Positions 5,595-62,415 of a stretch of 64,000 nt of DNA are shown here, in pieces. Within the stretch, counting starts at the first letter, position 1; each line of letters begins with the position of its first letter. Under the pieces are notes generated by a model. The model ran no database searches and was not told where the DNA came from. It saw nothing but the letters and a program-made list of their open reading frames with translations. Position numbers and translations under genes: made by a program. Source of the DNA: Bispira polyomma. Taxonomy: Eukaryota. The stretch lies in assembly GCA_965649765.1 (NCBI GenBank), contig OZ287748.1:94240001-94304000 (forward strand), read 5' to 3'.

Positions 5595-6694
5595 GTAATT
5601 TGTTTTTCATATATAACAGATCATAGTATTGATACTGGCCAATTGTTTTGGGGTGGTTGCATTCATGGACGCATCAAATGGTGTTTTTAGCATGATCCGT
5701 CATTAAGAGAGGTTGGTTTCGTATAACTAATAATATTAAGGGGGACCTTGGTTTATGGTCTGGCCTGAACTTGTCATTGGCGTTATGACCTTGACCTTTT
5801 GAAAGTCTTACCTTGTCTATGTTGTGGAGAGACCTCAGAAATTGATTTAAAATTAGTAAAAGTGTATGTAACCTTGCATAAGGAAGTGTAAACTTGGAAT
5901 GTGATGGATTGACCTCTGTTTGGCTTTTTGTAATTATTCCTAAAATTATGTTCAGCTGTGAAAGAATAGAAGGCATTGCATTTTATGAATAGGTATCTTG
6001 CACGTATTAACCTTGAAAGTTGATCTGAGACAAATATGTGAATAATATGTGAGGGAATGTATTCCTCATTTAAATGCTATAGAACATTTCTATTTGTTGT
6101 AAAATAGTTTGTCTAACTCTTTTTCTTTTTCAAACAAGGAACTAAACAAGACTATTGAATATTGTTTGTGTCCTCTACTGATTCCAAGGTAAACTTTTGT
6201 GTATGAAATTTGTATTTTTATATTTTACAAAGAGATACAGGTTACAAACATATCCAACATGAAGCAATGTATTACAGATGACTTTTTTGTCCAAATTGAT
6301 GTTATTGCCTAAACGTGTTGTGCTGCCTGTTAATGTGTCCCCTGCCCATAAATACATAGAACGGCAGAAATGTGTGGAAAAAAACAGACCACCAAACGGT
6401 GTCAGATGCATATTTAGTATTAATGGGGCAGCTTGCTTGCCATGTATCTGAAAAGAGAATTTAACTGTTCTATACACAAGTGCCAAATGGCCCCAGTAAG
6501 TGATTGATAAGTCATTATAGAATTGGTTATTTCAGTATGGGCAAATTGGTAAACATAAACATTGTGCAAGTTCATTGTAAAATTACTACATAAACTTCAG
6601 CAGTAATAAGAGTGTGTGTTTGTATACCACCGTGCTACATGTAATTTACTAACACTGGTGTCTTACTTGTAATACAAGATGCATCTAAATAAGT

Positions 6695-6946
6695 GAATTT
6701 GAATTGGGATATTTAACGTCCACTCTAGTACCTGTTTAGGTTATATTGGGACGGGTAGTTGGAAACGCTGGAGAAAACACTGCATACAGTTTATCAAGGT
6801 TCTGCACTGAAACCAGTGGCCCACAGTAAGGAACTACTACCTTTCCCAGATAGGCATCGACAGGACTCGAACTCACGCCGCCCAGAGGTGAGAGACCAGT
6901 GATTGTGAAGCGCAATGTTTGCTAACCACTAGGCCACCGCAGCCCC
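6695..6946 (-). mobile_element. tRNA-derived SINE, family 1, full length
   Basis: Minus strand has A box TGGCCTAGTGG and B box GTTCGAGTCC. 14-bp TSD GCATC(T/A)AAATAAGT at 6681-6694 and 6947-6960. Homologous to 61621-61878. Confidence 0.9.
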
Positions 6947-7400
6947 GCATCAAAATAAGTAAGGACTTTCTAAATTTACATTATGAAGCATTTTGCAATT
7001 TGTCTAAGTTATTCTTTAAAGTTAACCTCTGTCAACCCCTTTCAGTTGCCCAAAATGTGTGTTCAAATTGTTGTTTCCTATCAAGACATGGAAAGTGAAT
7101 ACAAAAGTTTTTTGTTCACCCATCTAGGAAACAAATTTACACTTTTAGTCAGGGGGTACTTCAATATTAATGCTGAAAACAGATAGTGCATCCAAAATAT
7201 TTACTGTTAACATGGGATTTTCATGTTCTAGACACATTTAAGATTAAAAAAAAAAAAGAAGTTTTGTTGGGAGGTTAATCGTAGTGTTAAGAACAAAGTT
7301 GACACTAAACAAATATCTTTTCTAACTATCCACAGGACTAAGACCAAAAGCTTAACATTTCAACAAAAATTAAAAACCAAAATCTTAAGCCTAAGACAAA

Positions 7401-8267
7401 TGGCCAGGTCACACTGGGCTTACATTTTGATTACGCACCCAAAAAAGTAAAACTGAGTAGAAACGTAGAAGAACCTACATATTTGTGTAATGAATGTATG
7501 CTTGCATAGGTCATAAATCTATCATTTCAAGCAGCATGAAAATATGTTACGTTTAAGACTTTTTTGGCAATCTCCACTGAAACGTTTCTTGCATTGAGGG
7601 ATAATGTATGGCATGTCTTACATGTCATCACTGCATATATGGACGTAAAAGACAGATATAAGACGTACTATGCATCTAAAACATCATCAAAACGTACCAT
7701 AAATGTCAAAGATGTAAGTGAAGCAAATACAATAATGTATTTGAAACTTGGCAAACGAGATGAAAATGTAATGAAATGCATAATGGAACGTATCCAAGCG
7801 TATTAAAAAAAGTGACAAACGTCACAAACGTAGTTGAAATGGCTGCCAAAACGTGATGAATAATTGAATAAAAGTCTTTTTTACGTTTCGCCATTGTCAC
7901 ATTTATATTTACTTGCTTGCCATGTATCTGAAAAGAGAATTTAACTGTTCTATACACAAGTGCCAAATGGCCCCAGTAAGTGATGACTGTAGAGGAGCCG
8001 AAAATAGTAGAGAGGCTAAGGTGGAAAAGCCTTGCCGAATGGGTAGATTTTGTAGAAATTAATTTTTAAGTGAGGCATTGCTGTATTAGCGTACATTGAA
8101 TGTGTGTATGTTATTTATATTATTCCCTTAATTGCCACTAGGGAGGCAAAGCTTTGGCAACAAGTACATTAAGGGAATAATATAAATAAAGCCTTAAGGC
8201 TTACACTTTATCAAATACTGTCAAAGGGCGCCATTGTAAACCCAAACGTTCAAGTGTGACCGAGCCA
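7401..8267. mobile_element. Non-autonomous TIR DNA transposon (PIF/Harbinger-like), nested in an older MITE
   Basis: Termini TGGCCAGGTCACACT ... AGTGTGACCGAGCCA; flanks AAA/TAA may be a decayed 3-bp TSD. The flanking CTAAGAC...TTTTTGTGCATACGG sequence matches the MITE family at 1-143. Confidence 0.6.
7912..8189. other. Chain of four locally templated insertions
   Basis: 7912-7984 = 6432-6504 (direct); 7983-8132 = reverse complement of 10734-10883; 8136-8167 = reverse complement of 9640-9671; 8166-8189 = 10732-10755 (direct). Confidence 0.92.
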
Positions 8268-8689
8268 TAAGTTAAGACTAAGACCTTTTTGTGCATACGG
8301 TCCACTGGTTCTTGGGGTTCTCCTTAAATGTGTTCAGATGTAGTCGGAATTTCATTTTTACATCAGATGACATTATGTCACATGATTTCATAGAGAGATG
8401 ATTCAGAGGTAAGCTTGTTTTTTAGTTTTTAGTATTGGCAGATGTATTTACCGGTAAATAAAAACTAGGCCTATTTAAAAAGACAAACCAAGCGACATTG
8501 ATTTCTCTTGGGACAGAATTAAAACATAGAAAAACTGATTGACGCTGGAAGTGCATTGTAGTGTGACAAGTTTCTTTACACTCTTGTTAATCTTTAATGA
8601 ACTCTTTTTTTACAACAAAAGCATTAGTTTTGATCAGGCACAGCTTGATGTTGTTTTCTGTCTGAAAAGGGTGCCGCCATGTTAGAAAT

Positions 8690-8761
8690 AATATGGAAGG
8701 CGCCTAAGAATCTCCTATTATGGAGAGCTTAAGCGCTATAAAAGTTAGATTAGATTAGATT
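8690..8761 (+). mobile_element. Extreme 3' end of an L2-like LINE with (TTAGA)n tail
   Basis: TTAAGCGCTATAAAAGTTAGATTAGATTAGATT. Related ends occur at 9762-9790, where it follows an L2 ORF2 remnant, and at 53415-53455. Confidence 0.6.
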
Positions 8762-9020
8762 CATGGACTGGTTGGAAGCGATCAACCCGTCCAAACTGAG
8801 GGGTGTCAGATTTGCCTGAGTATATATATTGGCCATATCAAAGTTAGTCTATTTCACACTCTGTGCCTGTGTCTTTTTTAAAAGACAACTCTTGTATTTA
8901 CACTACGATAGTACAAATTTTTTATTCTTGTTTTCTTTCTTACAAAATTGCTCCAGCAACCAAGATTATAAAATTACTGAATTTTTTTTAATTTGCCAGT
9001 TTTTACTACACAGCTATTAA

Positions 9021-9519: not shown

Positions 9520-9790
9520 CAACCTCATTTTGATCATAGTTTCGCCTATAATGCACCAAAACTTTGGAACAGTCTGTCGCAAGAAATTCATGCTGCTCCT
9601 ACCTTGTGTTCCTTCAGAAGTAAACTTACGACATACCAGGTACTTGTTGCCAAAGCTTTGCCTCCCTAGTGACATATTCATTCCGGCATCTCCTGGAATA
9701 CAACCATATTCCGGAAAAGGACGTTGCAAGACTTGAATATGAATATGTAATATTAATGGAGATTAAGCTCTATAAAAGTTTGGTTAGATT
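9520..9790 (+). mobile_element. Degraded L2/CR1-group LINE 3' end
   Basis: Translates to SFAYNAPKLWNSL..EI..APTLCSFRSKLTTY...ALPP*, which parallels the C-terminus of the RT ORF at 50823-52094. A 3' UTR and tail follow. Confidence 0.8.
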
Positions 9791-10680: not shown

Positions 10681-11959
10681 TACTGATGATCAGCGTTATG
10701 TTGTGGGACTCTCCATTGTTGGAAAACAAGCACATTAAGGGAATAATATAAATAACATACACACATTCAATGTACGCTAATACAGCAATGCCTCACTTAA
10801 AAATTAATTTCTACAAAATCTACCCATTCGGCAAGGCTTTTCCACCTTAGCCTCTCTACTATTTTCGGCTCCTCTACAGTCATGAGCCCTGTATGTCCAA
10901 TGGCTATATGAAATTATGAAAATGGTTTTCTTGTCTTATACACATTAGAATCTGCTAGTATGGAGTGTTATAAAAGTAAGATTTGATTAGATTTCTATAT
11001 TAGTATATTATAATATACATATTATTTAAGCCTATAAATACTACATTAGTGAATTGATATGTGACTTCCTGAGACAAGTACAGGGTCTTAGTAAGGCTAT
11101 AAATGAGGTTATACACTGAAGTGTATCCAGTTGCTGTTTGGATTAGAAATCTTCGCCCTTAGTTCATTAATCCTGGCCATGTTATTTCACAGTCTTGTTG
11201 TGTTGTAAGGCTGCTTTATTGAAGATGTTTTTTGGTTTACCTCCGTTCAGGCTAGCACCACTTCTTCTCACAGTGAAATTTTTTGTTCAAAGCCAGTTGA
11301 ATTTTCTTCTATATCAATTCATGAGTCAATTAAAGAGGTTTAAACATTCAGTTGAGTTTAATGTCTCTTTTCATCCTGTTCTGTGTAAAATAATGGCTGA
11401 CAGATCACTAGTGGAGGCAATCAAAGCAGGATAGTTGGTCAAGGTTTTTTGCTCTGTAAACCATCGGCCTTCAGCAAATTAAAACTCACTACTGGAGAGG
11501 GGGGTGGCGAGTGTGTTGCCACTTCACCACTGACCCCCCCCCCCCCCCCCCCCGCCCTCCCGACACACACACACATACACACAGACAGAGCGATCTAGGA
11601 GCAAAGATATAAGAACCACTGTTTGGACATCAGCTATAGAATATTTGTCCAAGCAATACCTGAGACACCCTTTCACTGATGAATGCCTTGGTAAACATAA
11701 AATAATCATCTGTGCATGTGGAAGTCAGTAGTGTCAAGGCCAAATCCCAGTTTGATCTTTGACCAGGGAGTGATGACCTTCGTTGAAAATCTGATTTGAT
11801 ACCAATTCGATGCAAAACAGCATCAGGTATCATGTATGCTTTTGTAACTTATGTGTCAGATTAAGTTTATACACAGCATTTTTTTAAATTTATATTTCAC
11901 TTTAAAGCATTGATATGGCTCCAAGTTGATATTTTGTCTAAGGCACTTGTTCTCAGAGA

Positions 11960-13874: not shown

Positions 13875-15050
13875 TATTGTAACTGTAGATGACAAAGGTT
13901 CTACAGTACTTTCAACTTTTTAAAAATAATACGCAAGGTTAGATCATTATTTTTCTTGCACATTTTTGAAAACTTCTACCTCCTTCTGTCTTTATAAAGC
14001 TGGATTGAACTTTTTTAAGGTGCATTCAGCATTAGATCTGCATTAAACACCAGTTTAGCAACACATTTTCCACAGATAGATAGAGTTGTTGCCTTATATC
14101 TCCAGCTCAACAGCCAAATTCATTGTAACAATCAGGAATTTGTTTTAATTTGGGCAGCAAATGGCTTGAGGCTACTTTACTTCTTAAGACATAGATCGTT
14201 GGTGCGATAAACAAAAGCCTTGGAATTAGAAGTCTTGCCTTTCCTTTGACCTGAGTTTACATCAATATAAAGAATTTATACTAGTACTGGGGCTGGCTTC
14301 ACCTAACACAGGCGGAAAGAGGTTTTTACATATAACGCTGAATTTAAAAAACCCACCTAGTTTTGGAATTTTGCAGTTGTGAAAATTTCAAAGTGAGAAG
14401 GCCACTGTTTTTTCGCTTTTCACAAGATTTGAGAAGCTTTTCTTTTTTTGGTGAACTTTCCTCACTGGATACTTTTGCTCTAAAGCAAGTAGGCAGAGAA
14501 GGTTGTTAAATTGCTGAATTTAATGCTAATATACACATTTTAAGTAGGAGACAAGGAGTTTAGATAGGAACCTTGTGAGAAACTGTCTTGAGATAAACCA
14601 GCAGAAGGTGATCTTGGTGACTGACTGTGTTTTCTAAGAATAGTTGACATGTACAAATGGTGGTGAAGATTAAAAATATTACAGGGAAATATGTGGACTT
14701 TCTGATAAGCGGAGATAAGGAACACCGCTTTAATGTGAAGAATGTCATGTAGTTCTGGATTCTTTATCTGTGAAACAACCATTGTGTGTGTGTGTGAAGT
14801 TACATGGTTGAAACTTCTCAATAATAAACATAATAAAGTCAAGAAAAATATGTGCTTTTTAATATAAATTCTGCGTGGAAAAATCAAATACTTTTACAGG
14901 GCGTGACTTTACCAAAAGTAAAAACGTGGTAGCGAAAAAAAAAAATTAAAAATTAAAAGAACGTTGCAATAATTTTTCCTTTTTTTTGATGGGACAAGAC
15001 TTAATTCGTATAGTATATGATATAGCTATATATAGACATATCATTTAACG

Positions 15051-15974
15051 ATGGAAAAAGATCAAAAAGATAAGAAAGCCAAGATGAATTTCTCCAGTTT
15101 CTTGAGGTCTACAAAGGCCTCGTCTGCTACTTTGACAAAAAATAGTGCAAAAACCGCTTCACCGAGCAGCAAGACTCAGACCGCTCCTACTTCAGACTCC
15201 AAACTCAGTTCCTCTTCTGCTAGTGCTGCAGCTTCCAGCAAAAAGAACAGTCCCAAACGGACTCCGCCCGGTACTCAGCCCTCTCATAGACCCAGAAGAG
15301 TGGGCAGCGTCAAGGAGACCAGTGTCACCAGCACCAGCAAAAAGCTTGTGACGGAGAAGGAGCCGAAGCGGGTGGTGGCATCCACGGTAACCAGTAGAGT
15401 GAGGAAGAAAATCAGCTCCAAAGACATGAATGCAGGGGAAAACGGAGCAGGTAGTGAAGAATTGGACGTCACTGTTGTTACAGCAGTAGTCAGTAGTGAT
15501 AATAAGAAGAAAGCTTCCGGAACAAGCGAAGGTGTGAAGAAGAGACATTCGAAAGAGTCAGGAGGCAGCAAAGAGGAAAGGCGGACGAGTGGTAACAGTG
15601 GTGGGACTTCGGCAGCAGGAAGTAGTAGCAGCAGTACAAAACATGGGAGGAAAGCTGCTTCTAAAGGCTTGTCTCACCGGCCACCTGATATCATACCTCT
15701 GAAGGACAAAGAACTCAAAGCCAAGAAACTGCGCAGTAAAAGGGAAGCCTCTTCACCGCCTTCATCTCCTGACCAGGTGAATAAAGATATGGAAGAAGAA
15801 GTTTTGAATAAGAAAGCAGCAGCAGCACCGCTCTCTGCTTCACCCAGTGGGAGTAAAACCAAGGAGGGTCATCGGTGGCCATGGAACATTAAGATTGTCA
15901 AGGCTGTCAGCTTAGATTTTCACAAGGATATACACCATACCTGGTCTGCACCTGAAGCTGGATCTTCTACAAAG
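15051..15974 (+). CDS. First coding exon B: 308-aa Ser/Lys/Thr-rich, probably disordered N-terminus of an unidentified protein
   Basis: Long GC-richer ORF with start context ACGATGG and an in-frame TAG at 15033-15035. A donor AAG|GTAACG lies at 15974/15975 (phase 0), after which the composition becomes intron-like. The ORF-track extension to 16118 is probably intron read-through. Confidence 0.8.
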
Positions 15975-17430
15975 GTAACGATTAATGCTTCATTGTGTCT
16001 TCCCCTACTGTTATACATTGTGGGTAGAGCTTATCAGAACCAAGATGGCTGCTGTAGCTACCTATGTGAAATGTCTAGCTCAGTGCTGTTATATATAGTC
16101 TGTCTAAAATCTAGATAGAAGTGTTAAAGTTAATGTCAATTGTAGTTTGGTCTTTAAGAACATTATTATTTTTCTTGTCTGTATCTCCATCTTTTCATGT
16201 CATGTCATATATGTTGGGCACAGTGTATCCACTTTCATTTATTGCAAATTTTATTGGCATTACATCATCTTCCACTATGGCCATGTTAGGAGATTGACAG
16301 TTGCTAGTGCTGGTTGGCTTTACCAGGGCAGTCACCAACAGGTTTATTGGTGTTTTTGAACACCAGACAAAGGTAGATAAACGTGTATAGATTTAAATAT
16401 TAATACAACTTATATTTTTGACTGTTGATGTTAAGGCCATTGTCTGGGGAGTCTGGCACTCAGTCATCAAAGGTTTTAGCCTCTGCCAGTACTTTTAATC
16501 ATTATCCTCACTTCTCTCAAAAGAAAAACTAAAGCCAAAAACATTTTATCTCTTTCTTTTTTTTTTCAATTTTTTTTCGTGACAATTTTAGGTTTAATTT
16601 TGGGACTCATCAGTCATTTATTTTTTGGGCAGAATAAATGCTTTAACAAAACAATGGAAAATAACAAGGCAGTGAAATAAAATGTTTATATATTTCCCTT
16701 CATTCTGGGAACACAAAACAGTCACTGTTGAAAGCCCTACGGTGAAATGGAAGTTGATGTTAGTGCACTGTATATTTAAACTGAAATATATTGATATTTT
16801 TTTGTTGGTCTTGGAAAAGCTTTTGAGAAGAAATTGTTTAATTAAAAAAAACCTTGATCGTTTTTTGGTATGATAAACCTTATAAGAGAGGATGCTGTAG
16901 TTTGTAGCTGTTGTCATGGTGACCTTCTGTGATTTAATAGCGAATTCTCAACAGGCTACAGGAAGGTGGATGTAACAACTGGAATTGGATAGGGGGGTGG
17001 GTGGGTGCCCTGTCCATATGCAAAAAACAAGGTGATCCGTTTACGTCAGGGTTTGGAATGTGATTTGTAAAGAGGGTGGGGGTTTGTGTTCAGTTAGAGC
17101 TGTTGTTTTTGTAAAAATAAAAATATTACCCCTTGCTCTGTCACTTCAAGTTGATCTATTTTGGGGCGAGATATAATTGGCTGTTTAGTCAAAGAGCTTC
17201 ATCATCTAAAGTTATTGTAAAACCATAACTGTAGAAGTATCTTAGTTATGAACAAACATCAGACAAAAAATGATCTTCGGGCTCTCTGGGCATATATTCA
17301 GAACCAGTTTGTTTTAGGTAGTTTGCAGACATCAGAGGCCAAGGTGTATTTCACTGTTACTTGGTTGTGGTTCGCTTTGGTTCTTAGACACTTCCTTTTT
17401 GGATATGATTTTAATGTACTTAACAATTCA

Positions 17431-17495: not shown

Positions 17496-17973
17496 TGTGC
17501 ACTGCATGTGACTATTAATAGAACTGACTTGAATGAGTACATTATACTCCTATTTACCTGCATGTGTCAAACAAACAATTACAGTGGGTGAATCAATGTT
17601 GTGTGCAGGTTGATGTTAAATGATCAGTTCTTAAATTTAATTTAATACATGTAGTTTTCGATGTTTAAAAATGTTCCTGTTTACAAGCTAGCACAGATTC
17701 ATTTTTTTTTTGCAACTCAAGTTAATCTACCGCTAGTCTCAATGAAAACTATGCTCAACTATTGTTATATAGCTTTTTGTAAAACATTATTCTGACTCAA
17801 GGGAATGTTCGTCAACAATTAAAGTCTACAAGGAAATAAATTTAAGCATGTTTCTTTTGTGGAGGTTTGAGATATTTAGAAATGTAGTATTCGACACATT
17901 TAGCCCATGTTCTGTTATGCACTTCTATAAAAGTCTTCTTAAAAAGTCTTCTTCTTCCTAAATATGTATATAT

Positions 17974-19068
17974 TACAGTAAATATGCAAAATCAGTAAAT
18001 ACGCATATTTACTGAAAATTTCAGTAAGTACGCGTACTTATTGGTTTTTAGGTCCAGTAAGTTCATGTATTTACTGAATTGTCTCATTATTCTTCAAGTG
18101 ATGATTAACTAGCCACATTAAGTCTTTTTCATCTATATGATGTATCATTATGTGGTAGTGGTAATTTTACAAGTTATTAAAGTGTCTATCTTTATTTAGG
18201 TCAATTTGTTTAGGCACATTACATAGACACTATGTTTTCTATCCTAAGTGTATGTTATACATGTCACCCAATTTATTACACCAATAAGTTACAAGTAGTT
18301 TTCAAAATATATATTTACACCTGAAAATGACTTTTGAAATAGATTTGCTTATAAAAATGACATTTTCTTGTACATTACATTTCATGCAGTAAATTACATC
18401 CTATTAATTAATTACATTATTACAGAAAATATTTACATGTAAGTTCATTATTTATTTTTACAGGATAAATAGAGTGGCACCTGCTGTTGTATTTCAGTTT
18501 AGGTTTATAACATTTGTATTCATTGTTTTTGCATTGATTTTCACTAGTTACATTTTGTAAATCCTTGTGCACCAATTCTTGAGTTTCCCTGCTGGGGTCA
18601 AATTAGGTGGTTGAGAATGTGCACTAACATTGAATCTATGTTCAACTGAATCAACTGATATTGCATGCTTTAAAGTGACCTAACTGAATCCAGATACTCA
18701 GTAGTTTAATAACTTTAAACACAAACCGCCAAATAATATCATATGTATATCATATGCATTAGAAATTTATCTTTTAAATGTTATTAAACCCTTAAATAAA
18801 ATTTTCACATTACACATGTTTACTGAAATGACCACCAGTAAACTTGTGAAATAATGCAGGCCCAAAACCAGTAATTACGCGTATTTACGGAAATTTTTAG
18901 GGATTACGCATATTTACTGACCAAATCAGTAAATACGTGTCAGTAAATACACGTATTTACTGAAATTTTTAGGGATTACGCATATTTACTGACCAAATCA
19001 GTAAATACACATATTTACTGAAATTTTCAGTAAATACACGTATTTACTGATTTGACATATTTTCTGTG
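17974..19068. mobile_element. Non-autonomous DNA transposon with long TIRs and palindromic subterminal repeats (EnSpm/CACTA-like)
   Basis: About 48-bp imperfect TIRs (T/C)ACAG.AAATATG..AAATCAGTAAATACG..TATTTACTGAAAATTT; repeated palindromes CAGTAAATAC..RTATTTACTG at both ends. Confidence 0.75.
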
Positions 19069-20529
19069 ACATATATAAGTCCTTTATGGTAAAATTTCAT
19101 GCAGTTCAACTCTTTAAGGTAAAATTCTGTTAAGTGTATTCCTCTTTTGTGTGGAGAAATATTTACAATCCTTAAAGGTGTTCATAATGTACAAGTAACC
19201 CTGTTAAGTGGAAGTCCTGCTTAAGTTAAAATCTGGCTCAAGTAGAGGTATGCCTTCTGATCACCTGGCAGAGGTTCTACTTCAAGGGCTTTAACTTTGT
19301 CACTAAAGTTCTTCAAAAATTAGTAACATGGCTGTCGGGTGAGATGATAAGGGACTAGATGAATTCCTCACACGGTCTAAGGTTCGCCCTGGCCAAGACC
19401 ACAAGCTGCTTATCACTATTACCCAGTAGTGAAACTTAAAGGCAAAAGGAAGTGATGAAGTTAATAGAGTTTAAAGGAGGTCAAGTGAAGGTCAGAGGGA
19501 AGTCATTCCAGACCAGAGGCCCATAAAGCCAACACAGTGAATTATTTTATTTTAACATGTATTTTAATCACTTTGGAATATGTCACATATGAATACATAA
19601 CAATGATAGAGGACAATGAACTGTCCTAAAGTTGGAATGGTTTATGGTTTGTACCTCTTAAGACAAGTAAAGTTTCCGCAAACTTCTTCTGTGTATTTTA
19701 CTACCCATTCCAACCCACAGATGTCATCACTTGTTTCATGATTTGACTCCCAGACATCCCTAGAACTTTACAATATGTATACTTAAATACTTTTTTTTGT
19801 ACCACCAGATATCTCTAACTTGGATGTAAGTAAAAATAGACGAAATCTTTCCTTGCGAGAAGTAAATTTGAGAAAATGTCTTAGACAGGGACATTATTTT
19901 TGTTCTCAGTACTTATAGGCCACCTAGGCTGTGCTAACTTATAGTTTTCAATGTACAGTGGAAATTTGTGCCAGTCACGTTTGCAGTTTGGAAGGAAGAT
20001 TGTTGTTGTTTAAAGTCATAATGGCCTCATGTAATATGTGGAATTCAAAGACTCTCCCACAAAGTGTAGGAGAAGACAAGAGGTGATTATCTGTCACTTC
20101 TGACATTTCCCAGCCAGAGAGTTTCAGACAGGCGTTTTGTGATAATGGCATTTAATAGGTGATAATATAGACAGTTGTATGAAAACAAGAGACTGTGTGC
20201 GAGATAATAACCATTTGTGGGGAGGAGTTTAAAAACATGGACTATTTGGAGTGGCAATAATAGTCTGGTGAACATTAAGAGAGAGACCCACCAATGTGTG
20301 GTTGTCATTTAGGTGACAGTCTGATAGCCCCCTCTGACAATCACTTTACAGGTTTTTGTGTATTTTGATCCAGACAATGACTAGCCTTGACTAAGGCTCA
20401 AAATAAAAAAATTAAAAACAAAATGTGTCTTATAATTTGTTTCTCCCCGGCCATTTTGAAAAACACTCTGTCCGTCCATGTCTGCATCCGTCCCAAGGTA
20501 TGCGGATATTGGATAATTGTTTTTGTTCT

Positions 20530-24239: not shown

Positions 24240-24751
24240 CACTGTCAAGGATGATCTGGAGCAGCCCCGATTTTTGACACCCCGGCCGTAATCCTGTAGC
24301 TCCAGGATTCATCTGGGCAGTCAGGGTCGCAATCCTGCTGATCTTTCTAAACAATCCCTTGATTTGAAATTTTACCCCCCTCTGGGCCAGGATAATCAGG
24401 AGTAACCTTGAGTACCCTAATGCCACCCAGGTTGATCTGGGTGTATATCCCCCTCCATCCCCCTAAAACAACAAAATGAAATCCTCATTATTGTAAAAAG
24501 ACCAACCTGGGTGACCTTCCCAATTGTCAGGATCAACCTGGGTGACTTTCCCGATTGTTAGGATCAACCTGGGTGGCTTGTTGCAGTTGAACCGTTGGGT
24601 CCTTCAAGATCACCCTGGCGTACCTCAGGATTATCTGGAGCATTTTTAAAAATTCAAGGTATTTCTTGTCACGGCAGGTGGTCCAGAGGATTCAGCAGGG
24701 TGCCACCAAGATCGTAAAAATCGGGGCTGCTCCAGATCATCCTTTACTGTG
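24240..24751. mobile_element. MITE with 36-bp TIRs
   Basis: CACTGTCAAGGATGATCTGGAGCAGCCCCGATTTTT versus the reverse complement of the right end, 2 mismatches; internal repeats of AGGATCAACCTGGGTG. Confidence 0.8.
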
Positions 24752-25296: not shown

Positions 25297-26591
25297 CAGT
25301 GTGCGAAATTTTGGTGGCCCGTTTGGCCACCTTGTTTCCGGGGCTTCGATTTTTTTTTGCTACATGCGCTAACAGTATAATATGGGTACCAGACTGTTCC
25401 ATTTTTCTTCGGCACGCATGCGCCGACAAAACTTTACCGTGAAACTTTTGATTTTATTGAAAAGCAGGGATATGGATGAAGAACCCTCTTTTTGTTAAAT
25501 AAAATGAAGATTTTATATATTTGTATGTAGTTTTGTATGTAATCTTTATACTTTCAAATTAAAAGCGAATTTTATGCATATTTCACTAACTTCATCTATT
25601 ATCGCCCAGTGCTCTCACCGCTAACCGACTAGCTTCGTCTTTGCTAGTGCTTTAATTTTTGAATTTTTACCCCATCTTGTGGCCCTTTCTTTGGGGTTAA
25701 ATAACTGGACTTGCTTTAATTTTAAATTTCGAATTCAGTCCAAATTCAGTGTTTTACAGTCAACTCGACCCCTCTTGCCCCCTCATTCGAAATAAATAAG
25801 AGGGGCTGATAAATTTTCAGCCCATCTTGTGGCCCTCTCTTTGGGGTTAAATAACTGGGCTTGCTTTAATTTTAAAATTCGAATTCACTGCAAATCTAGT
25901 GTTTCACAGTCAACTCGATCTCTCTGGCCCCCTCATTCAAAATAAAGATATAAATAAATAAATTTTCGGCCCATCTTGATTCTTGTGGCCTTCTTTTTAG
26001 GGTTAAATAACTGGGCTTGCTTTGATTTAAATTTCAATTCAGTGCAAATTTAGTGTCTCACAGTCAACTCGACCCATCTGGCCCCCTTACTTGAAATAAA
26101 TATATAAATAAATATATTTTCGGCCCATCTTGTGGCCTCTCTTTGGGGATAAATAATTGGGCTTGCTTATTTTTTAAATTTTGAATTCAGTACAAATTCA
26201 GTTTTTCACAGTCAACTCGACCCCTCTGGCCCCCTCATTGAAAATAAACATACAATGTATATAAATAAATTTTTGGTCCATCCCGTGGCACTCACTTTGG
26301 GGTTAAAATGACTGGGCTTGCTTAATTATTAAATTTCAAATTCAGTGTTTTACAGTCAACTCGACCCCTCTTGCCAAGGGGCTAATAAATTTTTAGCCGA
26401 TTTTTTTTAAAATTACACAATGCATAATTTATTATGCATTAAAAAATTTAAGTCGTATTCTAAAAAAACATTTTATAGCTTAATTTTTCATTACCAAGTA
26501 TTGGGCCACCTGATTCTAATCCGGGCCACCAAGCTATAAAATCTGGTGGCCCAAGGGGCCACCACACTTATTCCGCGAAGTTCACACACTG
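25297..26591. mobile_element. Non-autonomous hAT transposon with five internal units of about 150 bp
   Basis: TIRs CAGTGTGCGAA / TTCACACACTG; perfect 8-bp TSD ATTCTTGG at 25289-25296 and 26592-26599; units start near 25671, 25821, 25970, 26124 and 26278. Confidence 0.9.
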
Positions 26592-27334: not shown

Positions 27335-28104
27335 TGTTACGGTCACGGGAGCAAGCGCGGTAGCAATTACCTGTTACTTTGAGGTTGTAACAGGAAAAGA
27401 CAAAAAGTTTCACTTAACAAATTTATTAACAAATAAAATAACAATTACAGAATTACAGTCAACTGAGATACCCTTAATAGCTCATACAATAATACAATAA
27501 TGAAACCAATCTGACCTGACCACAGTCCTGTCCACATAAATAACAATTAAACAAGTTTGTCCACTGTATCCAGCAATCTGTCTTGAGATCCGCTCAGTGT
27601 CCACACAATGCCTGTATCCTGTTATCCCTTTGGTGTCCTCGAACACAAAATATATATATATATTCAGAGAGTCTACACAACTAAGCTATCCAATCCAGGA
27701 TGCAAAAATATCCAATATGCAGTAAATCCAATCCCTGGTAGATCCACAACTTTTATCTAGTTCACTCCAATGAGTTCACCACAAAAACATATATAGTAAT
27801 CAGTTTATATCCACAGGAAAAGAAATAAAATGTTTCACAGTATAGCAGTTCATATAGCACACCAACTCAATAAACTCTTGTCTGTGGCCAGACTGTCAAC
27901 CCTTTTCTATACAACTGCTAGAGAAGGCTCTAGAATATGTAAGCAATTGCTAGAACATTCCAGAGATGAGATATACATATGAACACAACTTTAATAACAA
28001 CAAAGAACCAGCTTCTAGAAGCTTAGGGGTTTCCCCAATTCTATAAATAGATCACTCTAGCAGAGTGCTTTAACATACATACCACAATGTCCTTATATGT
28101 AACA
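27335..28104 (-). mobile_element. Solo LTR (Gypsy-like), 770 bp
   Basis: Inverted termini TGTTAC ... GTAACA with a 4-bp TSD TCTC. Removing it restores the host repeat motif TTATCTCGGAAACGG. Minus-strand AATAAA at about 27422-27427 suggests the orientation. Confidence 0.85.
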
Positions 28105-28756
28105 TCTCGGAAACGGTGCTAGATAGAGCGATTTCGAGCTCATTCTTGACCCACAGGGTTGATTTTGCTTATATGTAAACTTTCACAAAATTTTCTATTT
28201 TGGCGGCCATCTTGAATTTCTGCGTCTTTTTCGAAAATGTCTAATATCTCGGAAACGGTGCTAGATAGAGCGATTTCGAGCTCATTTTTGACCCACAGGG
28301 TTGATTTTGCATATATGTAAACTTTTAAAAAATGTTCAATTTTGGCGGCCATCTTGAATTTCTGCGTCTTTTTCGAAAATGTCTGTTATCTCGAAAACAG
28401 TGCTAGATAGAGCGATTTCGAGCTCATTTTCGACCCACAAGGTTGATTTTGCTCATATGTAAACTTTCAGAAATTTTTCAATTTTGGCGGCCATCTTGAA
28501 TTTCTGCGTCTTTTTCGAAAATGTCCTTTATCTCGGAAACGATGCTAGATAGAGCGATTTCAAGCTAATTTTCGACCCACAGGGCTGATTTGCCTTATAT
28601 GTAAACTTTTGAAGTAATTTTTGATTTGGGCAACCATCTTCAATTTCTGCGTCTTTTTCGAAAATGTCTGTTATCTCGGAAATGGTGCTATATAGAGCGA
28701 TTTCGAGCTTACATTTGACCAAAAGTACTGATTCTGCTTATATGTCAACTTTTAAA
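28105..28756. repeat. 142-bp tandem array, about 4.6 copies, inside HINE family B
   Basis: ATCTCG.AAA..RTGCTA.ATAGAGCGATTTC recurs at about 28104, 28246, 28388, 28530 and 28673. Confidence 0.92.
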
Positions 28757-29333
28757 CAATATCAAACCTTGTACACTAAACAATTTCATTATTATTTTAA
28801 CTTTAGGGAGGCTTCGTTTTTGTTATCAAAAACCGTTTTCTAGTTGTCTTTCCACCTGTTAGATCCGCTGTTCCATCTAAGGGGAAATATACCCACCGTA
28901 GCTTGTCCAGATAAATTTTACAAAAGGAAACAGATAGAAACATGCTGATTACTGGCAGACAAGAGTTACAGTAGTAATAGGGAAATAGTCTAAAAGGGGT
29001 GGCAATTGTCAAAAACAGGCGGAAACAGGCGATTATTGGTACAGCAAACTAACAGTAATGATATTGAAATACTCTGAAATTGGTGGAAGGATTTTTTCCG
29101 TTTTGACCCTACCCAAAACTTTCGCCTGGCACGGCTGATTGTAGAAGGTTTAGGAAGGAAGCTGAAGTTAAGGAAAGTTATAGATAGGGTTCACCGCAGT
29201 ACAAGACGATTTTCAGAACGTCTCTTGCCACCTCTGTCTGCCGTTATAGTGTGATCCCCACATTAGAAGGCTGTAACCAGGTAGTAATGATGCCATACCA
29301 TCAGAGTGTGAACCCCACATTAGCTGTGAAGTA

Positions 29334-61620: not shown

Positions 61621-61878
61621 GGGGGTCGCGGTGGCCTAGTGGTTAGCAAGCATTGCGCTTTACAATCACTGGTCTCTCACCTCTGGGCGGTGTGAGTTCG
61701 AATCCCATCGATGCTTATGTGGGAAAGGTGGTAGTTCCTTACTGTGGGCCGCTGGTTTCTCTGCAGAACCTTGACCGACTGTATGCAGTGTTTCCTCCAG
61801 CGTTTCCAACTACCCGTCCCAATATAACCTACTAAAAGGTACTAGAGTGGACGTTAAATATCCAAATTCAAATTCAAA
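61621..61878 (+). mobile_element. tRNA-derived SINE, family 1, full length
   Basis: A box TGGCCTAGTGG, B box GTTCGAATCC, (AAATTC)n tail; 14-bp TSD CTCTCCAATC(T/A)CAG at 61607-61620 and 61879-61892. Confidence 0.92.
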
Positions 61879-62088
61879 CTCTCCAATCACAGCTTATCCC
61901 CCCTACAGATGACCTTCTGATCATGACCCATTTCTGTCCTCTGACTAACCATTTGGACAACTATCGCATTAGAGTATACTGCATCAATTTGGTGCTGTAT
62001 AAATTCTTCTTTTATAATAATAATTAAAAAAACTAGCAAGAACGCTGCTGTGGTGAAAGTATCCTACCTTTGTAATAACAATGGGGAA

Positions 62089-62415
62089 GGAGGGGGTGGT
62101 GTGTGGTGCCTTGGTTGAGGTGTTGGGGATGGAGGGGGTGGTGTGTGGTGCCTTGGTTGAGGTGTTGGGGATGGAGGGGGTGGTGTGTGGTGCCTTGGTT
62201 GAGGTGTTGGGGATGAAGGGGGTGGTGTGTGGTGCCTTGGTTGAGGTGTTGGGGATGGAGGGGGTGGTGTGTGGTGCCTTGGTTGAGGTGTTGGGGATGG
62301 AGGGGGTGGTGTGTGGTGCCTTGGTTGAGGTGTTGGGGATGGAGGGGGTAGCGGGTGGTGCCTTGGTTGAGGTGTTGGGGATGGAAGGGGTGGTGTGTGG
62401 TGCCTTGGTTGAGGT
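62089..62415. repeat. G-rich minisatellite, 42-bp unit, about 7.8 copies
   Basis: GGAGGGGGTGGTGTGTGGTGCCTTGGTTGAGGTGTTGGGGAT repeated with period 42. Confidence 0.97.

What the first reader, a model, noticed from the sequence alone, without database searches (positions are those of the whole stretch)
7912..8201. A transposon interior stitched together from four copies of nearby sequence
Seen: inside the TIR element 7401-8267, 278 bp is almost entirely exact copies of sites within 3 kb. These are 73 bp from 6432-6504 (direct), 150 bp from 10734-10883 (inverted), 32 bp from 9640-9671 (inverted, an L2 remnant) and 24 bp from 10732-10755 (direct). A perfect 12-bp palindrome AGCCTTAAGGCT follows at 8190-8201. 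Two junctions share 2-bp microhomology (AT, AC). Established: serial template switching at microhomologies is the signature of polymerase theta-mediated end joining, MMBIR/FoSTeS and aborted SDSA. Inference: this is a recent repair scar that loaded host DNA into a TIR element still at its original site, which could be the first step of Pack-type capture. The inverted pieces could also pair with their templates in the pre-mRNA.
Basis: partly seen in the sequence, partly recalled or inferred. Interest (0 to 1): 0.8.

Follow-up and report, generated by a model that had tools for sequence, protein, structure and literature searches.

The report
Multi-template repair scar in dead transposon
A recent DNA break inside a long-dead transposon of this animal was patched with about 280 bases copied in short pieces from both strands of neighbouring DNA, a real and unusually readable example of a known kind of repair scar rather than a new way for transposons to capture genes.

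Summary
In detail: 275 of 278 bases at 7912-8189 are exact copies of four sites 1.4-2.7 kb away. Read-derived contigs of two samples (one study) carry the patch at flank depth and its shared pieces at twice that depth, so it is not an assembly chimera. The host is a non-autonomous PIF/Harbinger-like element, about 15% diverged from its family, with no young copies found. No other copy carries the patch.

Additions: almost nothing was deleted. The insert (284 bp) starts at a 6-7 bp match between element and first donor and ends with a 4-bp duplication. One '2-bp' junction is an 8/9 match. Both palindrome halves match one spot in the 150-bp donor. Two mismatched junctions suggest left-to-right synthesis.

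This is an iterative microhomology-primed templated insertion (MMBIR-like gap filling, probably closed by microhomology end joining). It works like the single-copy, transposition-independent Pack-TIRs of Tan et al. 2021 but fails their single-donor criterion. Multi-template germline insertions are known in humans. Onward Pack-type mobilisation is unlikely, and pre-mRNA pairing is untested. The scan noted a similar, unchecked multi-template insertion elsewhere in this genome. Low interest.

The parts
7401..8267 (+). Host non-autonomous TIR element, PIF/Harbinger-like MITE (583 bp without the patch; family about 500-620 bp; 15-bp TIRs; TWA target duplication, mutated on the left here)
   Evidence: 40 or more copies at 69-81%; full copies end in TWA on both sides, 85.4% to the family majority, best single copy 84.7%; no young copies
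7912..7918 (+). Left priming microhomology, 6-7 bp shared by the element and donor A (6432-6438)
   Evidence: The family majority carries TTGCTT at this position independently of the donor; chance of 6 bp or more about 0.0005
7912..7984 (+). Segment A, direct copy of unique DNA 6432-6504
   Evidence: twice single-copy depth in run X3
7983..8132 (-). Segment B, inverted copy of 10734-10883 (about half unique DNA, half an old dispersed repeat)
   Evidence: twice single-copy depth in X1 and X2
8133..8135 (+). B/C junction: three bases that read as donor B continued with one base skipped; B and C share 5 of 8 bases in register here
8136..8167 (-). Segment C, inverted copy of 9640-9671, the 3' end of an L2-type LINE remnant
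8166..8189 (+). Segment D, direct copy of 10732-10755 (the strand opposite to the end of B), entered through an 8/9 match at 8159-8167
   Evidence: chance of 8/9 about 0.0003
8188..8202 (.). Terminal 14-bp palindrome (8189-8202): left half equals the reverse complement of 10833-10840, right half equals 10833-10839; it ends in the 4 bp that duplicate 7915-7918 and rejoin the element
   Evidence: 8-mer in a shuffled donor B: p = 0.005 before correcting for the start positions tried
6432..6504 (+). Donor A, unique sequence 1.4-1.5 kb left of the break
9640..9671 (+). Donor C, inside an L2-type remnant at about 9520-9720, 1.4-1.5 kb right of the break before insertion
10725..10883 (+). Donor of B and D, and probably of the palindrome, used on both strands, 2.5-2.7 kb right of the break before insertion

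Best explanation
One recent, inherited repair event at a break or stalled fork after base 7918, inside a long-inactive MITE. The left 3' end primed on a 6-7 bp match 1.5 kb upstream and copied 66 nt. It then switched through short or imperfect matches to the + strand at 10883 (about 150 nt), to 9671 (32 nt), back to the opposite strand at 10732 (22 nt), and twice more around 10833 (6-8 nt). That last step produced the 4 bp that annealed to the right end, so almost nothing was lost and 4 bp were duplicated. Shown: donors, junction matches, near-zero loss, single copy, presence in reads, old host. Inferred: single event, left-to-right order, replication or D-loop synthesis (MMBIR/FoSTeS or aborted SDSA) for the long tracts, polymerase theta-like closure for the short ones. 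The transposon is a passive host.
For: Exact donors. Family alignment shows the pre-insertion sequence and no gap (L016 flanks abut). Microhomologies 6-7, 2, 5/8, 8/9, 2, 0 and 4 bp. At B/C and C/D the extra matches lie upstream (5/8 and 6/8) and not downstream (1/8 and 2/8), and the left segment's base is kept. Patch-donor divergence is at most 1.1% (95% bound) against 14.6% of the element from its family. Contigs in three runs at flank depth. It matches published features: filler median 224 bp, nearby donors mostly under 5 kb, microhomology, small gaps, old elements (PMC8277862); germline insertions from up to five templates (PMC8421209).
Against: No empty allele or outgroup was seen, so the pre-insertion sequence is inferred from a 15%-diverged family. 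The enzyme cannot be read from sequence. The palindrome centre has no microhomology. Polarity rests on two junctions. Several separate events at one spot cannot be excluded formally.
Confidence: 0.82

Rival explanations
1. Pure polymerase theta-mediated end joining made every tract, by repeated priming and release at a double-strand break with 4-nt overlapping ends.
For: Many short or mismatched microhomologies, both orientations, tracts shrinking to 24, 8 and 7 nt, closure on a newly made 4-bp match. Theta is known to make secondary microhomologies in this way (PMC7165422) and to sample non-flanking molecules (PMC10923293).
Against: Theta scars are described as 3-30 bp, first tracts rarely over 10 bp, from flanking DNA (PMC7165422). 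Here the tracts are 66 and 150 nt from 1.4-2.7 kb away. This is a variant of the best explanation, differing only in enzyme.
Confidence: 0.25
2. Transposase-triggered event: the element was cut or excised, and abortive gap repair from the sister chromatid with template switching produced a Pack-type derivative that can still move.
For: The patch lies between recognisable TIRs, 65 bp from the right end. A junction palindrome can arise from hairpin ends (own knowledge).
Against: No young family member among those scored; the patch is at least about 25 times younger than the element; no internal deletion, whereas excision repair should leave larger gaps (PMC8277862); single copy; mutated TSD and TIR.
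Confidence: 0.05
3. Several independent small duplications accumulated at one fragile site over time.
For: Three separate donor regions; the palindrome could be a later addition.
Against: All segments are equally undiverged, abut with 0-3 bases between them, and three of the pieces return to the same 150-bp donor.
Confidence: 0.06
4. Assembly or library chimera.
For: The runs are from one study and may be the assembled individual; the B/C junction is not spanned by a listed contig; three junctions are spanned by 28-30 letters on the short side, just under the tool's 31-letter rule.
Against: Three runs from two samples show junction-spanning contigs with no differing letters at flank depth, and the shared pieces at about twice that depth.
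Confidence: 0.02

Closest known systems
Single-copy Pack-TIRs formed by transposition-independent gap filling (Tan et al. 2021, PMC8277862)
   Same: Old non-autonomous TIR element at its original site; filler of a few hundred bp (median 224); donor within 5 kb on the same chromosome; microhomology at breakpoints; small gap; single copy.
   Different: Three donor regions in four to six pieces on both strands instead of one parental copy; donors overlap other repeats; no exon shown. Their pipeline would have excluded this case.
Germline complex MMB-TI (MMBIR-like templated insertions; Osia et al. 2021, PMC8421209)
   Same: Inherited insertion from several templates in both orientations, joined by microhomology or microhomeology, returning to the original template; 26-33 complex events per human genome examined, up to five templates.
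   Different: Their first template was sought within 100 bp; here all donors lie 1.4-2.7 kb away, in an invertebrate-like animal genome.
Local n-jumps and cycles of templated insertions (Li et al. 2020, PMC7025897)
   Same: A string of copied local templates with inversions that returns to the host site and re-replicates a short stretch (here 4 bp).
   Different: Those are somatic cancer events at kb-Mb scale; this is a 284-bp event at full copy level in normal samples.
Polymerase theta templated insertions, TINS or filler DNA (Carvajal-Garcia et al. 2020, PMC7165422)
   Same: Iterative priming, direct and inverted pieces, closure on a newly synthesised microhomology.
   Different: Typical size 3-30 bp from flanking DNA; here tracts up to 150 nt from kb away.

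Membership tests
Single-copy Pack-TIR (Tan et al. 2021 criteria) | Both termini of one TIR element flank the insert (at least 10 bp each) | tested here: met
   TIRs at 7401-7415 and 8253-8267, 13/15; family copies have the same ends
Single-copy Pack-TIR (Tan et al. 2021 criteria) | Internal foreign sequence of 100-5000 bp, at least 90% identical to a source | tested here: met
   284 bp, 100% identity
Single-copy Pack-TIR (Tan et al. 2021 criteria) | One parental copy whose length is 80-120% of the insert | tested here: not met
   The largest donor is 150 of 284 bp; criterion read
Single-copy Pack-TIR (Tan et al. 2021 criteria) | Parental copy free of transposons within 100 bp | tested here: not met
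   Donor B overlaps a repeat family, donor C lies in an L2-type remnant
Single-copy Pack-TIR (Tan et al. 2021 criteria) | Element without filler at the orthologous site in outgroups | not testable with these tools
   The genome has no relatives in the tools; no empty allele was listed
Multicopy, mobilised Pack element (Pack-MULE, FoSTeST Pack-TIR) | Further copies of element plus cargo with distinct target duplications | tested here: not met
   The patch matches only itself and its donors in the genome
Multicopy, mobilised Pack element (Pack-MULE, FoSTeST Pack-TIR) | Recently active family or available transposase | tested here: inconclusive
   No copy above 85% identity among those scored, but only 40 candidates are scored per search and no transposase search was run
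Complex templated insertion (MMB-TI, local n-jump) | Insert made of copies of two or more templates that remain in place | tested here: met
   twice single-copy depth for A and B
Complex templated insertion (MMB-TI, local n-jump) | Microhomology or microhomeology at junctions above chance | tested here: met
   6-7 bp (p about 0.0005), 8/9 (p about 0.0003), 4 bp (p about 0.006); the 2-bp junctions alone are not significant (p about 0.075)
Complex templated insertion (MMB-TI, local n-jump) | Return to the original template with little loss | tested here: met
   Family alignment: 0-4 bp lost, 4 bp duplicated; inferred from paralogues, not from an empty allele
Polymerase theta TINS | Short (3-30 bp) inserts from break-flanking DNA | tested here: not met
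   66-150 nt tracts from 1.4-2.7 kb (definition); only the last three pieces fit the size
Polymerase theta TINS | Genetic dependence on POLQ | not testable with these tools
   Needs mutants
PIF/Harbinger non-autonomous element (host) | 3-bp TWA target duplication and short TIRs | tested here: met
   Most of ten full copies are flanked by TAA or TTA on both sides, with 15-16 bp TIRs; the assignment of TWA to PIF/Harbinger is from my own knowledge
PIF/Harbinger non-autonomous element (host) | Matching autonomous element with Harbinger transposase and Myb-like ORF | not tested
   No search run

The most novel reading that the evidence does not exclude
This animal's germline regularly repairs breaks by kb-range, both-strand, zero-loss multi-template copying, a size class between theta inserts and cancer template cycles that single-donor Pack-TIR screens filter out. 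A genome-wide census would then show many such scars, some inside still-mobile TIR elements, giving a direct route to multi-fragment Pack elements in animals.
Probability: 0.1. Interest if true: 0.5.

Novelty: new member of a known kind. Interest (0 to 1): 0.22.

Why it matters
It is a clean natural record of one multi-step template-switch repair event in an animal germline, with readable order, mismatched priming and closure. It shows that single-donor Pack-TIR catalogues miss multi-donor fillers. It carries no gene, sits in an inactive element and has no shown effect, so its value is as an example. It would matter more if such scars proved common in this genome or were found in mobile elements.

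Tried and rejected
Patch as part of the family consensus: rejected. Donors as mere dispersed repeats: rejected; A is unique, B crosses a repeat/unique boundary, and other copies of the B and C repeats are 77-90% alike against 100% locally. Assembly chimera: rejected. Segment D as a fold-back on the new strand: possible but less economical, since the genomic donor gives an 8/9 match and two more identical bases. RNA-templated origin: unlikely, since the donors are copied from both strands. The palindrome could also derive from 7386-7394 with a one-base slip; not resolved. Gene context: Pfam on ten ORFs found only an L2-type reverse transcriptase at 50760-52091; the 360-codon ORF at 15036-16115 had no Pfam or Atlas hit, so an intronic position is not shown. 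No RNA run held the stretch.

Full report
Observation. Exact-match scans confirm all four segments at the stated coordinates: A, 73 bp direct from 6432-6504; B, 150 bp inverted from 10734-10883; C, 32 bp inverted from 9640-9671; D, 24 bp direct from 10732-10755. Together they cover 275 of the 278 bases 7912-8189. The palindrome is 14 bp, 8189-8202. No similar cluster of abutting exact local copies was seen in the rest of the window or in 105 kb of other loci from this genome. The window lies on the largest contig of a 1.035-Gb assembly with 75 contigs and has no N.

Is it real? Three public runs from two samples of one study hold the region. Their contigs include 7563-7941 across the left junction, 7955-8132 across A/B (run X3) and 8138-8753 across C/D, the palindrome and the right junction. 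All have no differing letters and lie at the depth of the flanks (12.6-14.8 in X1, 14.2-14.7 in X2, 66-78 in X3; the X3 contig across A/B, which includes two-copy sequence, is at 111). Segment B has about twice that depth in X1 and X2 (29.3, 31.5), and segment A twice in X3 (164). So donor and copy both exist in the DNA. The B/C junction is not among the listed pieces. The samples may be the assembled individual. The contigs run unbroken over 7918 and 8202 and no joint skipping the patch was listed (192 joints were not shown), so no empty allele was seen. Equal depth argues against a rare somatic event; inheritance is inferred from that.

The host element. 7401-8267 belongs to a family with at least 40 copies at 69-81% identity. 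Full copies are about 500-620 bp, with 15-16 bp TIRs and TAA or TTA on both sides, the PIF/Harbinger pattern (own knowledge). Without the patch the window copy is 583 bp, 85.4% like the family majority and at most 84.7% like any other copy. A search with another copy also found no young member. None carries the patch. With 0 differences in about 272 bp, patch and donors differ by at most 1.1% (95% bound), so the patch is at least about 25 times younger than the element. The element was most likely inactive when the patch formed.

What the patch replaced. Aligning 19 copies across the site shows that almost nothing was lost; in L016 the two flanks abut. The last four of these bases recur at 8199-8202, where the element resumes. 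The insert is therefore 7919-8202, 284 bp, with a 4-bp duplication and 0-4 bp lost. This is inferred from paralogues, not from an empty allele.

The donors. A is unique in the genome. B is unique over 10734-10813 and part of an old repeat beyond, whose other copies are 81-85% alike. C lies in an L2-type 3' remnant with copies at 77-82%; its translation matches the C-terminus of the window's own L2-type ORF. The patch is 100% identical only to the local copies and holds cut pieces of them, so copying went from donors to patch. Before insertion the donors lay 1.4-1.5 kb left, and 1.4-1.5 and 2.5-2.7 kb right of the site.

Junctions and order. A/B shares 2 bp, which is chance level (p about 0.075). 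At B/C, donor B continued and the sequence upstream of C agree at 5 of 8 in register; the three 'untemplated' bases read as B with one base skipped. At C/D the match is 8 of 9, not 2 bp (p about 0.0003). At both, the extra matches lie upstream of the switch and the base of the left segment is kept, as expected if a 3' end growing left to right primed on an imperfect match. D starts where B ended, on the other strand. The palindrome's left half equals the reverse complement of 10833-10840 and its right half equals 10833-10839, again one spot of donor B read on both strands; an 8-mer would occur in a shuffled donor with p = 0.005, and more like 0.05 after allowing for the start positions tried, so this step is suggestive only. 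Its last 4 bases supply the match to the right end.

Mechanism. The best reading is one iterative microhomology-primed synthesis event at a break or stalled fork. Long tracts from kb away on both strands point to MMBIR/FoSTeS or aborted SDSA. The short final tracts and closure on a newly made microhomology look like polymerase theta. Theta scars alone are described as 3-30 bp from flanking DNA (PMC7165422). The enzymes are inferred, not shown.

Comparison with what is known. Tan et al. 2021 (PMC8277862) found 370 Pack-TIRs in 100 animal genomes. Nearly all are single-copy, in elements a median 18.3% diverged, with fillers of median 224 bp, nearby donors mostly under 5 kb, microhomology and small gaps, formed without transposition. 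This locus works like those. It fails two of their criteria (one parental copy of matching length; no transposon beside the donor), so I do not file it as a member. Multi-template inherited insertions with both orientations are described in human genomes, 26-33 complex cases per person and up to five templates (PMC8421209), and as local n-jumps and cycles in cancers (PMC7025897). It meets the features of that class.

What is not supported. Nothing shows onward mobilisation: single copy, old family, no coding cargo. The 150-bp arms 2.6 kb apart could pair if both lie in one transcript, but no RNA run or gene model covers them.

Earlier notes of the scan. First readers noted a multi-template insertion with a 43-bp duplication and a filler fragment inserted 2 kb from its donor elsewhere in this genome. 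I could not fetch them, so they are unchecked leads that such scars recur here.

Verdict. A real, well-preserved scar of a known repair process in a passive host element. New member of a known kind; interest 0.22.

Noticed in passing
window 7330-7400 and 8268-8310: The MITE sits inside another dispersed repeat: contigs from other genomic copies join 7389 to 8268, and 8268-8300 matches other loci at 97%.
   Followed up: partly
window 15036-16115 (+): A 360-codon open frame rich in S, K and T with no Pfam or Atlas hit; looks like a large low-complexity coding exon of an unidentified gene.
   Followed up: partly
window 18863-19075 and 17967-18081: A scrambled array of short direct and inverted units, with a 47-bp exact internal repeat and a related copy 1 kb away; could be a minisatellite-bearing element or an older template-switch scar.
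   Followed up: no
window 24240-24275 and 24716-24751: A 36-bp inverted pair (29 bp exact) about 440 bp apart, probably the TIRs of another small element.
   Followed up: no
window 8650-8900: A very high-copy short repeat: summed contig depth thousands of times the single-copy level.
   Followed up: no
window 50760-52091 (+): A 444-codon open frame of an L2-type LINE ORF2 with a reverse transcriptase domain.
   Followed up: partly
window 48360-49491, 62082-62415, 28100-28760, 25662-26375: Tandem arrays with units of about 43, 42, 142 and 150 bp.
   Followed up: no
window 6694-6946 and 61622-61876: Two inverted copies of a 255-bp repeat at 91% identity, younger than the MITE family.
   Followed up: no
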